A stretch of DNA of 64,000 nt from Octopus sinensis (lineage: Eukaryota): positions 48,794,001-48,858,000 of the forward strand of contig NC_043008.1 in assembly GCF_006345805.1 (NCBI RefSeq), read 5' to 3'. The stretch's first letter is position 1, and every line of letters starts with the position of its first letter. Positions 7,421 through 21,657 of this stretch are shown here, piece after piece. Both the position numbers and the translations under genes were made by a program. Under the pieces are notes generated by a model that searched no databases, was not told the DNA's origin, and was given only the letters and a program-made list of their open reading frames with translations.

Positions 7421-8197
7421 CAATTCCTTGTGTTCCTTAACAGGCTGAGAGGTGCCGACGGGGGTCTTTGAAGACTGGTGAGGTTGCTTTATTGTGATTC
7501 TTAAGGGAGGTCGTTGATCTGGAGTAGTAATATCCAAAGAAGCGGTAACACTGCCGCCGTCGCCACAGGTACTGGACACCTTACTAGCAGGTGCTTTACT
7601 ACTACAACTACTAGTGGTAGTGGTGGTAGTATTACTAGTGGTAGTAGTAGTAGTAGCAGCAGCAGTAGTTGTGGTGGTGGTAGTGGTGGTATTAGTGTTG
7701 TTGTTGTTATTGTTATTGTTGTTTGTATTTGTTGGTTGCCAAACGTGGGATCGTTTCGTCTGGACGCTTTTCCTTTTGGCAAAGATCTTTAACTTCAGTT
7801 GGCCCCGATCGAAGTTCGTCTCTTGAATCCGAAACTCCTTCGTTTCGTGCTGACAGTCTCCGTAATCGTCGTCGTCGTCGTCATCATCATCATCATCGTC
7901 GTCGTTTGTGTTCTTGTCTTTGTTATTGTTGTTGTTGCTGTTGCGGCGGTGGTGGCTGGTTTTGATGTTGCTGTTGCTGTTGTTGTTGTTGTCGTCGTAG
8001 TTAGATTCGGCACCGCCACTAGAGGTACAGTTCTCCGATGTGGAAGAAGAACAAGACGATGAGGAAGATGAAGAAGGTGATGATGATGATGGCGAAGATG
8101 AGGAATCAGTCTCGTCACTACTATTTTCGGCTTCAGGATTATATCCGTGGGTCAGTTTCTTGTCGTACGCTGAATTCGATCTGTCCAACTCACTCAT
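7421..8197 (-). CDS. ASH1L: ASH1L-like histone H3K36 methyltransferase, first large coding exon (exon 8228-7421, probable ATG at 8197; gene continues leftwards)
   Basis: The ORF contains KEFRIQETNFDRGQLKLKIFAKRK and RPPLRITIKQP, which resemble the human ASH1L N-terminus as I recall it ([25 protein letters not shown]...RPAIKTTIKHP). Acceptor ctaacttccag|G at 8229/8228 and donor GAATTG|gtaaaa at 7421/7420. No SET, bromo, PHD or BAH exons were seen in the window. Confidence 0.75.
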
Positions 8198-9299
8198 TGC
8201 TTGGTACACGCACCAACTCCAGTTGTTCCTGGAAGTTAGTTCGTGCGACCGAACTTGCTTGGTTCTTCTTCTCACAACAATGTGAGACAGAACCAAGGAA
8301 CAATAATGACAATATTAATAATAGATAAATAGTTATATGATATAATAATATAATAACGATATATATATATAAGTGGAAACTGCAAAGAAGCCTGGAAGAT
8401 CTTCTTGTTTCTTTTTGTGATTCCCTTTTGATGGCTCGATCTACAAATTTACAGAATAAACGTCTCCGTTGGTTTATTTCGTTGAGCGCAACTCATTGCA
8501 CTTTTGTCAAAAGTATGACATATATAATTAATTAACATCCACAACAGATATGGAAAATATTCAATTATCGATCGGAGATAATAATAAAAATGATGATTAT
8601 CACTGCAAAAGCTTTCGTTTTGTCGTTTTTTTGTTTTTGTTTCTACAATACGATTATTACATATTAATTAGGGCGAATTAATGAGACGGTTATAATCCAA
8701 GTTTATCAAACAAATCCATGTGCATCGTTCGTTGTTTACAATAGTGATCATAAATGTGTGGTTAGTGTGAATAGATATCGAAGAAGAAGAAGAAGATGGG
8801 AGAAGAAGATAGGAGCAGCTCGAAGGAGGACTTGTTACAGCATAGCAGCAGTGAAAAGGGATCGAACCCGGGGAAAATACCAGTTGATTTCGAGGTCTCT
8901 TCGATGGTGAAGAGTGTTTACAAAAAGCAGAACAAGTGTTGTGATTTGTGTCGATAATAAAAGAGAAATCGCAGCAGATTTTGGTTGGAATAGATTTTGG
9001 TTTTGGGAGAAAAATGAGTTTTTGGCTGAAGAGGAAAAACAGCGACGAGAATAATTGAGCGATTTGTGATGGAAATTGGCAGTCAACAACAAGCTTCCTT
9101 AATAATAAAACTGTACGTGCGTGTGTGTGTGTGTGTGTCGATGTATATATATGTACACATATGTATATAGGTGTGTGTGTGTGTATCTGTGTGTGTGTGT
9201 GTGTGGTGTTGGCAGAGAATAATTGCAGACGGTTCCGATGAGAGAAAACGATTGATAAATAAATGCAATATCGTTAGAGATACAAGGTGGAAATGGTGT

Positions 9300-10040
9300 T
9301 GGGTAAAGTACCGTTTGAGATAGTTTGAAAGAGAGAGAAATAGGCAAAAATTTGCTTGGTTCTTTTCTTTTTTTTTTCTCTTCTAAGAAGCGTGGTCACG
9401 TAGGTGACCGCCAAAACTACTCTTTTCAGAAGACATGAAGCGACTATGATATAAACAATACATGTCATCCAGTTCAAACATCATCTGCTCGATAGCCTAC
9501 CTTATCTTCTTTCAGTTTGATAGGTGGAAATAGTGAAAATATCGGGCAAATGGTTCACCCAAACAATCCGTACAAACCATTCTAGGATACATTCACAATA
9601 TGGCGGTTGGCAGCGGAGCTCGACAGTTACGTAAATCTAGTTTCCGAACCGAAAATCAATTCCTTCCAACCACTTCCAACGCCTCTTTTCCTCACGATCC
9701 TTACATTAATCACAAAGAATATGATGTTTCCTTTCCAGTCGAATCTATTCGCCGTGGATCGAACGAATCAGTTTAATACTTGAAAAGATTGTCGGATTAG
9801 GAAATTCTACTCCTTTCGGATTTACTCGTGTTGTTGTGGTAAAGATATAAATGAATAACATCTCGCGAGATTCATTTTTCAGGTCATCAAATAATACTCT
9901 GTCTCTATTTTTTCTCTTTTCGTAATCGATTCAATTTTAGAAATAACATCGACAAAATCGAAAACAGAGATAATTTTCCCAAAAAATAGCTTCCAGCCTC
10001 TTTTCCCAGAATCCTGTCGGCCTCCTTCAAAGATGGCTTT
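9300..10040. promoter_or_regulatory. Putative bidirectional promoter between ASH1L and DAP3
   Basis: CpG-retaining unique sequence between divergent genes. It contains TCTCGCGAGA (9861-9870), TTCCCAGAATCC (10003-10014, ZNF143/Staf-like core), CAATATGGCGG (9596-9606, YY1-like) and the inverted repeat GGTCAC-GTAG-GTGACC (9394-9409). Confidence 0.55.
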
Positions 10041-21400: not shown

Positions 21401-21462
21401 GATTTCATGTGTTCACATGTGTTACATCTCCATTTTCTACAGGTATCAACCCAACTGAAGTG

Positions 21463-21657
21463 ATGCAGTCCCTTCGAAAACTAGCAACCTCCTCATTGGT
21501 CTGGAATCGGCTGGAATGCAAGCTACAAACATCTATTGCAACCACGGCAGCAGCAGCAACAGCTGCTGCTACCATCAGTGGGAAATATTCCACGTTAGCT
21601 CAGCAGTTCTTAGAGGCAAACCAAAAGAAACAATTCCGCACACAGATTCAAGACCCT
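21463..21657 (+). CDS. DAP3: DAP3/mS29 coding exon 1 (exon starts at 21443); mitochondrial-presequence-like N-terminus
   Basis: Acceptor ttctacag|G at 21442/21443, ATG at 21463, donor CCT|gtaagt. Encodes MQSLRKLATSS...KKQFRTQIQDP; FRTQIQDP aligns with DAP3 ISRTNENDP. Phase 0. Confidence 0.8.

What the first reader, a model, noticed from the sequence alone, without database searches (positions are those of the whole stretch)
7421..21657. ASH1L and DAP3 are head-to-head, echoing their linkage in vertebrates
The sequence shows ASH1L (minus) and DAP3 (plus) diverging from a short shared interval. From memory, human ASH1L and DAP3 are both at 1q22 in divergent orientation with MSTO1/YY1AP1 between them. 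If correct, this pair is a protostome-deuterostome microsynteny that survived the heavy genome reshuffling of coleoid cephalopods. A shared promoter could be the constraint linking a chromatin regulator to a mitoribosomal gene.
Basis: partly seen in the sequence, partly recalled or inferred. Interest (0 to 1): 0.7.

Follow-up and report, generated by a model that had tools for sequence, protein, structure and literature searches.

The report
Octopus ASH1L-like and DAP3 divergent pair
In this octopus chromosome piece the mitochondrial-ribosome gene DAP3 and a very large gene that is most probably ASH1L start back to back from a conserved stretch of at most 2 kb, and a fish and a sea star seem to share this arrangement, so it is a real but ordinary case of an old conserved gene pair.

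Summary
The window is Octopus sinensis CM016870.1:48,794,001-48,858,000.

- **DAP3 (plus strand):** proven. It is identical to RefSeq XP_029643407.1 apart from a 1-nt assembly deletion.
- **Minus-strand exon 8228-7421 (ATG at 8197):** it is the first coding exon of the gene annotated head-to-head with DAP3 in O. vulgaris (3902 aa) and Argonauta hians (3987 aa).
- **The ASH1L name is probable, not proven.** It rests on a short N-terminal motif (ETNFxxGxLKLKI) shared with the dap3-adjacent gene of a teleost. That fish gene matches my recalled human ASH1L in two places. No database-labelled ASH1L N-terminus could be retrieved.
- **The shared interval is not the 13.3 kb between the two ATGs.** Two independent gene models give DAP3 a 5' exon ending at 10168, spliced to 21443. 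The real gap is therefore under 2 kb. It has undepleted CpG and holds blocks 84-92% identical to Argonauta, including a TCTCGCGAGA palindrome.
- **Other animals:** the same divergent adjacency is seen in a teleost (6.3 kb) and, at motif level, in a sea star (3 kb). It is absent in a wasp and a horseshoe crab and unresolved elsewhere.

This is a new member of a known kind, a conserved 5'-5' microsyntenic pair. Interest is moderate.

The parts
7421..8228 (-). First coding exon of the ASH1L-like gene. Acceptor AG is at 8230-8229, with a CTAAC branch-point-like site at 8239-8235. The ATG is at 8197. It encodes 259 codons, mostly low complexity, ending KEHKEL. The donor GTAAAA starts at 7420. The motif QETNFDRGQLKLKIFAKRK lies at about 7822-7766.
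   Evidence: Searches give the sequence and translation. In some searches three tblastn HSPs hit the first exon of the 3987-aa Argonauta gene. In some searches the CDS of the O. vulgaris 3902-aa gene starts at the same ATG. Searches show that the acceptor, branch site and donor are conserved in Argonauta.
1..7420 (-). Start of the intron after the first coding exon of the ASH1L-like gene. The rest of the gene lies outside the window. The stretch contains a 1.31-kb tandem duplication.
   Evidence: No further block is conserved with Argonauta apart from repeats. One search shows the duplication.
8229..10156 (.). Shared 5' region of the two genes, the inferred bidirectional promoter. CpG o/e is about 1.0-1.4, and several blocks are as conserved as coding sequence. 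The exact transcription start sites are not determined.
   Evidence: CpG; conservation with Argonauta; the same CpG peak in Argonauta.
9373..9502 (.). Conserved non-coding block, 92% identical to Argonauta. It includes the palindrome-like TGGTCACGTAGGTGACC (core at 9396-9407) and a minus-strand donor-like ATAAG|GTAGGC at 9506-9495.
9523..9642 (.). Conserved non-coding block, 84% identical. It includes a YY1-type CGCCATATT on the minus strand at 9597-9605.
   Evidence: The motif's name comes from general knowledge.
9796..9872 (.). Conserved non-coding block, about 88% identical, ending in the palindrome ATCTCGCGAGAT. TCTCGCGAGA itself is at 9861-9870.
   Evidence: In one search the motif occurs once in 64 kb, against 0.01 expected. 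It is present at the homologous place in O. vulgaris and Argonauta.
10157..10168 (+). Non-coding 5' exon of DAP3, or its 3' end: AGCAGCACTCAG followed by the donor GTAAGC at 10169. It is used in both the O. vulgaris and the Argonauta gene models.
   Evidence: Argonauta model IRQQHSG...; O. vulgaris model MCEQHSG|INPTEVM.... The donor and the next 20 nt or so are nearly invariant between the genera.
8754..8760 (+). ATGTGTG followed by GTTAGT. This is the start of the DAP3 CDS in the O. vulgaris model only, 557 bp from the ASH1L-like ATG. It is doubtful, because it is not conserved in Argonauta.
10169..21442 (+). 5' intron of DAP3, 11.3 kb here against about 4.8 kb in Argonauta. CpG falls sharply at about 12.0 kb. 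There are 22-23-bp tandem repeats at 12261-12652 and 13125-13200. From 13.7 kb onward at least 9 interspersed-repeat fragments have copies elsewhere in the window.
21443..21657 (+). DAP3 exon that carries the start codon (ATG at 21463). It is preceded by the acceptor ttttctacag and followed by the donor GTAAGT.
40852..62182 (+). Further DAP3 coding exons: 40852-40956, 46685-46793, 50712-50804 (P-loop GERGVGKT), 56241-56377, 58619-58693, 59540-59618 (1-nt deletion at 59573-59576), 61199-61277 and 62123-62182. The last ~96 codons lie beyond the window.
   Evidence: Pfam PF10236 hits individual exons and the whole proteins.

Best explanation
The window holds the 5' ends of two divergently transcribed Octopus sinensis genes.

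- On the plus strand is DAP3 (mitoribosomal protein mS29).
- On the minus strand is a gene of about 3900 codons that is most probably the ASH1L orthologue.

The two genes start from one shared region of under 2 kb (about 8.2-10.2 kb). It has undepleted CpG, is presumably unmethylated, and acts as a TATA-less bidirectional promoter. Its candidate core elements are a TCTCGCGAGA palindrome, a YY1-type site and a CACGTA-containing palindrome, all conserved among octopods.

DAP3 is transcribed rightwards through a short non-coding exon ending at 10168. It is then spliced across an 11.3-kb intron, swollen by repeats, to the ATG exon at 21443. The ASH1L-like gene is transcribed leftwards from an undefined non-coding first exon, spliced to 8228.

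The adjacency and orientation are inherited from an early bilaterian ancestor. They probably persist because the intergenic space is so short, and so full of promoter elements serving both genes, that few breakpoints are tolerated.

**Shown:** the identity of DAP3, the divergent orientation, the sequence conservation, the CpG pattern, and the same arrangement in two other octopods.

**Inferred:** the name ASH1L, the transcription start sites, bidirectional promoter activity, and the ancestral age.
For: **DAP3.**
- 99% identity over 100% coverage to O. vulgaris mS29, plus 65 further DAP3 orthologues.
- Equals XP_029643407.1.
- The window equals GCA_006345805.1.

**Neighbouring gene.**
- The upstream minus-strand gene has a 3987-aa product in Argonauta and a 3902-aa product in O. 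vulgaris.
- Both start at the ATG homologous to window 8197.

**Shared interval.**
- A block of about 800 bp (window 9083-9877) is 74% identical to Argonauta, with sub-blocks of 84-92%. The ASH1L-like exon itself is 73% identical.
- Nothing but repeats is conserved in DAP3 intron 1.
- CpG o/e is about 1.1 up to 12.0 kb against 0.05-0.4 beyond, with the same peak in Argonauta.
- TCTCGCGAGA is unique in the window and conserved in three octopods.

**DAP3 5' exon.** Two independent annotations splice ...CAGCACTCAG|GTAAG onto the ATG exon.

**ASH1L name.**
- The pattern TN[FYC]xxG[QN]L[KR][LM][KR][LIV] occurs once, on the minus strand upstream of DAP3, in each of the window, Argonauta, Patiria and Synchiropus. 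It occurs nowhere else in the six-frame translations of the window and the eight loci then held.
- The Synchiropus neighbour matches recalled human ASH1L at residues 72-120 (E 1e-13) and 1020-1056 (E 2e-11). Recalled GON4L has no hit.
- The recalled SET region is confirmed as ASH1L by PDB entry 6ine_A at 639 bits.
- A vertebrate-only profile ranks the three octopod exons as its top three non-self hits among 14,316 segments.

**Synteny.**
- Teleost, 6.3 kb between the two CDS starts.
- Sea star ORF about 3 kb upstream of DAP3 and divergent, tblastn E 8e-5 to 4e-4.
- Human order.
Against: - No sequence labelled ASH1L by a database could be aligned to the exon. Searches returned nothing useful.
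- A pairwise BLASTP between the octopus motif region and the fish exon gave no alignment.
- The vertebrate profile hit has E of about 0.8.
- None of the three large neighbour products (3987, 3902 and 1938 aa) has a Pfam hit on record. A complete ASH1L should show SET, bromodomain, PHD and BAH. Pfam hits are precomputed for only part of the collection, so this is weak.
- The two DAP3 models that support the 5' exon contain odd micro-exons: 8 nt in Argonauta, and 7 nt plus 12 nt in O. vulgaris. They disagree upstream of 10157.
- There is no RNA or CAGE evidence for either transcription start site.
- The pair is not adjacent in Polistes or Limulus.
- Nothing ASH1L-like lies within 10 kb of DAP3 in Gigantopelta, coho salmon, Umbra or a bird.
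- In human, DAP3's divergent partner is YY1AP1, so the ASH1L-DAP3 promoter sharing is dispensable.
Confidence: 0.62

Rival explanations
1. The genes are adjacent but not promoter-sharing. DAP3 is transcribed from a promoter just upstream of its ATG exon (about 21.0-21.44 kb). The 5' exons in the Argonauta and O. vulgaris models are annotation artefacts. The conserved 8.2-10.2 kb region serves only the ASH1L-like gene. The 13-kb spacing is then ordinary intergenic DNA, and the linkage is kept by chance or by slow local rearrangement.
For: - The supporting gene models contain implausible micro-exons and differ from each other.
- The RefSeq-derived range for O. sinensis DAP3 begins at the ATG.
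- No RNA data were available.
Against: - A strong acceptor (polypyrimidine tract plus AG) lies 20-32 nt before the ATG in both genera.
- The donor CAGCACTCAG|GTAAG and its downstream 20 nt are nearly invariant between genera.
- The DNA upstream of the ATG exon is CpG-depleted (o/e 0.13-0.43), carries an interspersed repeat (21135-21367, 10 copies elsewhere in the window) and is not conserved.
Confidence: 0.17
2. The minus-strand gene is not ASH1L but another very large, mostly disordered protein gene. The ETNF..G.LKLKI resemblance to vertebrate ASH1L is then coincidental or reflects a shared short linear motif. In that case there is no ASH1L-DAP3 microsynteny in octopus.
For: - Only about 13 residues align.
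- BLASTP shows no pairwise alignment.
- The profile hit has E of about 0.8.
- The exhaustive phmmer search of 1.84 billion representative proteins found only low-complexity matches.
- No Pfam hits are on record for the 3902-aa and 3987-aa products.
Against: - The motif sits in the first coding exon of the gene divergent from DAP3 in four lineages, and nowhere else in six-frame translations of the window and the eight loci then held.
- The fish gene carrying it matches recalled ASH1L at a second, distant site.
- The product size of about 3900 aa suits an ASH1L with expanded low-complexity regions.
- The octopod exons are the best non-self hits of a vertebrate-only profile.
Confidence: 0.12
3. 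The linkage is old but is held by long-range regulation, not by a shared core promoter. In this gene-regulatory-block or 'bystander' model, enhancers of one gene lie in the introns of the other, so breaks between them are selected against.
For: - This is one of the two mechanisms proposed for conserved microsyntenic pairs (PMC3514665).
- ASH1L is a developmental chromatin regulator and DAP3 is a housekeeping gene with very long introns here.
Against: - No conserved non-coding block was found in DAP3 intron 1 between Octopus and Argonauta.
- Nor was any found in the first 7.4 kb of the ASH1L-like intron.
- All the conservation is concentrated between the two 5' ends.
Confidence: 0.07
4. The divergent adjacency arose independently in octopods, teleosts and sea stars.
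For: The pair is absent in the two arthropods sampled and was not seen within 10 kb in a gastropod, two other fishes and a bird.
Against: The chance that one particular gene out of roughly 20,000 becomes the divergent neighbour of DAP3 three separate times is negligible. The negative cases are either true losses (wasp, horseshoe crab) or uninformative because only 10 kb of flank could be read.
Confidence: 0.02

Closest known systems
Conserved ancestral microsyntenic pairs (CAMPs) in 5'-5' orientation, such as HSPD1-HSPE1 (Irimia et al. 2012, PMC3514665)
   Same: Two unrelated genes are kept adjacent and divergent across phyla. The intergenic distance is short, the intergenic sequence is highly conserved, and at least one partner is a housekeeping mitochondrial gene (one search gives the criteria).
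   Different: - Co-expression is untested here.
- The pair is broken in arthropods and interrupted in human.
- I could not check whether ASH1L-DAP3 is already in that paper's list, because the supplement is not held.
- The pair is not named in the supplements of two later microsynteny papers.
Human DAP3-YY1AP1 bidirectional promoter at 1q22
   Same: DAP3 is driven from a CpG-island-type promoter shared with a divergent chromatin or transcription-related gene. CRISPRi of that element silences both genes (bioRxiv 10.64898/2026.02.11.705362).
   Different: The partner in human is YY1AP1, with ASH1L the next OMIM gene beyond it. In octopods, and in the teleost Synchiropus, the partner is the ASH1L-like gene itself.
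TCTCGCGAGA-type TATA-less bidirectional promoters of vertebrate housekeeping genes (from general knowledge, not checked in a paper here)
   Same: A perfect TCTCGCGAGA palindrome lies in a CpG-undepleted region between two divergent genes, close to a YY1-type site.
   Different: - The organism is a mollusc.
- The region is AT-rich (37% G+C), so it is not a classical CpG island.
- Function is untested.
- The motif is not present in the fish or sea-star intervals.

Membership tests
DAP3 / mS29 (Pfam PF10236) | Sequence match to the DAP3 family over the whole protein | tested here: met
   The spliced model scores 697 bits at 99% identity to O. vulgaris mS29, and 66 DAP3 proteins all carry PF10236. 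Single exons hit PF10236 in colinear order.
DAP3 / mS29 (Pfam PF10236) | P-loop nucleotide-binding motif GxxGxGKT | tested here: met
   GERGVGKT is encoded at 50714-50737.
DAP3 / mS29 (Pfam PF10236) | Intact reading frame | tested here: not met
   The exon at 59540-59618 lacks one G (59573-59576) relative to the O. vulgaris and Argonauta proteins. RefSeq tags the product 'LOW QUALITY PROTEIN'. This is most likely an assembly error, not a pseudogene.
ASH1L orthologue (H3K36 methyltransferase) | AWS-SET-postSET catalytic module | not testable with these tools
   Only the first coding exon lies in the window. The full octopod proteins could not be retrieved, and no Pfam hits are on record for them.
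ASH1L orthologue (H3K36 methyltransferase) | C-terminal bromodomain-PHD-BAH | not testable with these tools
   Same reason as for the catalytic module.
ASH1L orthologue (H3K36 methyltransferase) | N-terminal similarity to vertebrate ASH1L | tested here: inconclusive
   - A motif of about 13 residues, ETNFDRGQLKLKI, is shared.
- It is the best non-self hit of a profile built from one real fish sequence and the recalled human one, but at E 0.76.
- There is no pairwise BLASTP alignment.
- The chain through the sea-star exon is better, at E 8e-5.
- The fish gene matches recalled human ASH1L at E 1e-13 and 2e-11.
ASH1L orthologue (H3K36 methyltransferase) | Reciprocal best hit to ASH1L | not tested
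   This needs the full protein and a labelled proteome.
Bidirectional promoter pair | Divergent (5'-5') orientation with no gene between | tested here: met
   Searches list no other gene. The strands follow.
Bidirectional promoter pair | Transcription start sites less than about 1 kb apart | tested here: inconclusive
   There are no TSS data. The distance from the ASH1L-like ATG to the conserved DAP3 5' exon is 1.96 kb. The annotated CDS starts are 557 bp apart in O. vulgaris and 2.36 kb apart in Argonauta.
Bidirectional promoter pair | Unmethylated CpG-rich promoter region | tested here: met
   CpG o/e is 1.0-1.4 over the interval, against a window mean of 0.39, and the pattern is conserved in Argonauta. 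Methylation itself was not measured.
Bidirectional promoter pair | Co-expression, or loss of both transcripts when the element is perturbed | not testable with these tools
   No expression data were available.
Conserved ancestral microsyntenic pair | Adjacency in several phyla, including both protostomes and deuterostomes | tested here: met
   - Mollusca: O. sinensis, O. vulgaris and Argonauta.
- Chordata: Synchiropus directly, and human with intervening genes.
- Echinodermata: Patiria, at motif level only.

This depends on the ASH1L assignment.
Conserved ancestral microsyntenic pair | Conserved orientation | tested here: met
   The candidate exon lies on the strand opposite to DAP3, and upstream of it, in all four lineages.

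The most novel reading that the evidence does not exclude
ASH1L and DAP3 have shared one bidirectional promoter since before protostomes and deuterostomes split. The sharing would be functional, coupling the dose of a Trithorax-group H3K36 methyltransferase to mitoribosome and apoptosis capacity. That is why the pair survived even the coleoid genome scrambling. The conserved octopod core (TCTCGCGAGA, a YY1-type site and a CACGTA palindrome) would be an invertebrate example of the vertebrate TATA-less bidirectional promoter grammar.
Probability: 0.2. Interest if true: 0.55.

Novelty: new member of a known kind. Interest (0 to 1): 0.38.

Why it matters
If the ASH1L assignment and the old age hold, this is one more deeply conserved 5'-5' gene pair. 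It comes with an unusually clean octopod promoter to dissect: under 2 kb, three conserved palindromic or oriented elements, and a sharp CpG boundary.

It would also be a marker of ancestral linkage that survived the cephalopod genome reorganisation. The comparison with human is instructive, because there the divergent partner of DAP3 has become YY1AP1. The promoter's bidirectionality seems to be kept while the partner can change.

There is also a practical annotation point. The 13 kb between the two start codons is mostly a DAP3 5' intron, not intergenic DNA.

Tried and rejected
**Searches for a labelled ASH1L relative**
1. The search for homologous proteins with the whole exon. The 8000-candidate limit was filled by low-complexity words, and there was no hit.
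2. Exhaustive phmmer of the exon against 1.84 billion representative proteins. It returned five low-complexity matches and nothing informative.
3. The same exon with its low-complexity runs cut out. Only 5 candidates were found and there was no hit, so the octopod ASH1L-like proteins are evidently not in the word index.
4. Pfam on the exon found nothing.
5. PDB search with the fish first exon found nothing.
6. Full-text searches for ASH1L N-terminal peptides found nothing.

**Other lines that led nowhere**
7. Supplements of PMC9023564 and PMC8851819 searched for ASH1L or DAP3: no occurrence. The supplement of PMC3514665 is not held.
8. Rfam and tRNA scans of the interval gave only sub-threshold microsatellite-driven miRNA hits. 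A hidden RNA gene as the reason for the conservation is rejected.
9. The bacterial promoter and terminator scan was at chance level and is irrelevant to a eukaryote.
10. Pfam on TE-looking ORFs in the introns gave no support, so I do not name transposon families.
11. DAP3 loci of Gigantopelta, Limulus, coho salmon, Polistes, a bird and Umbra were negative or uninformative within the 10-kb flank limit. Pristis was not on record.
12. I considered GON4L/YY1AP1 as the identity of the neighbour. I rejected it because recalled GON4L hits none of the loci.
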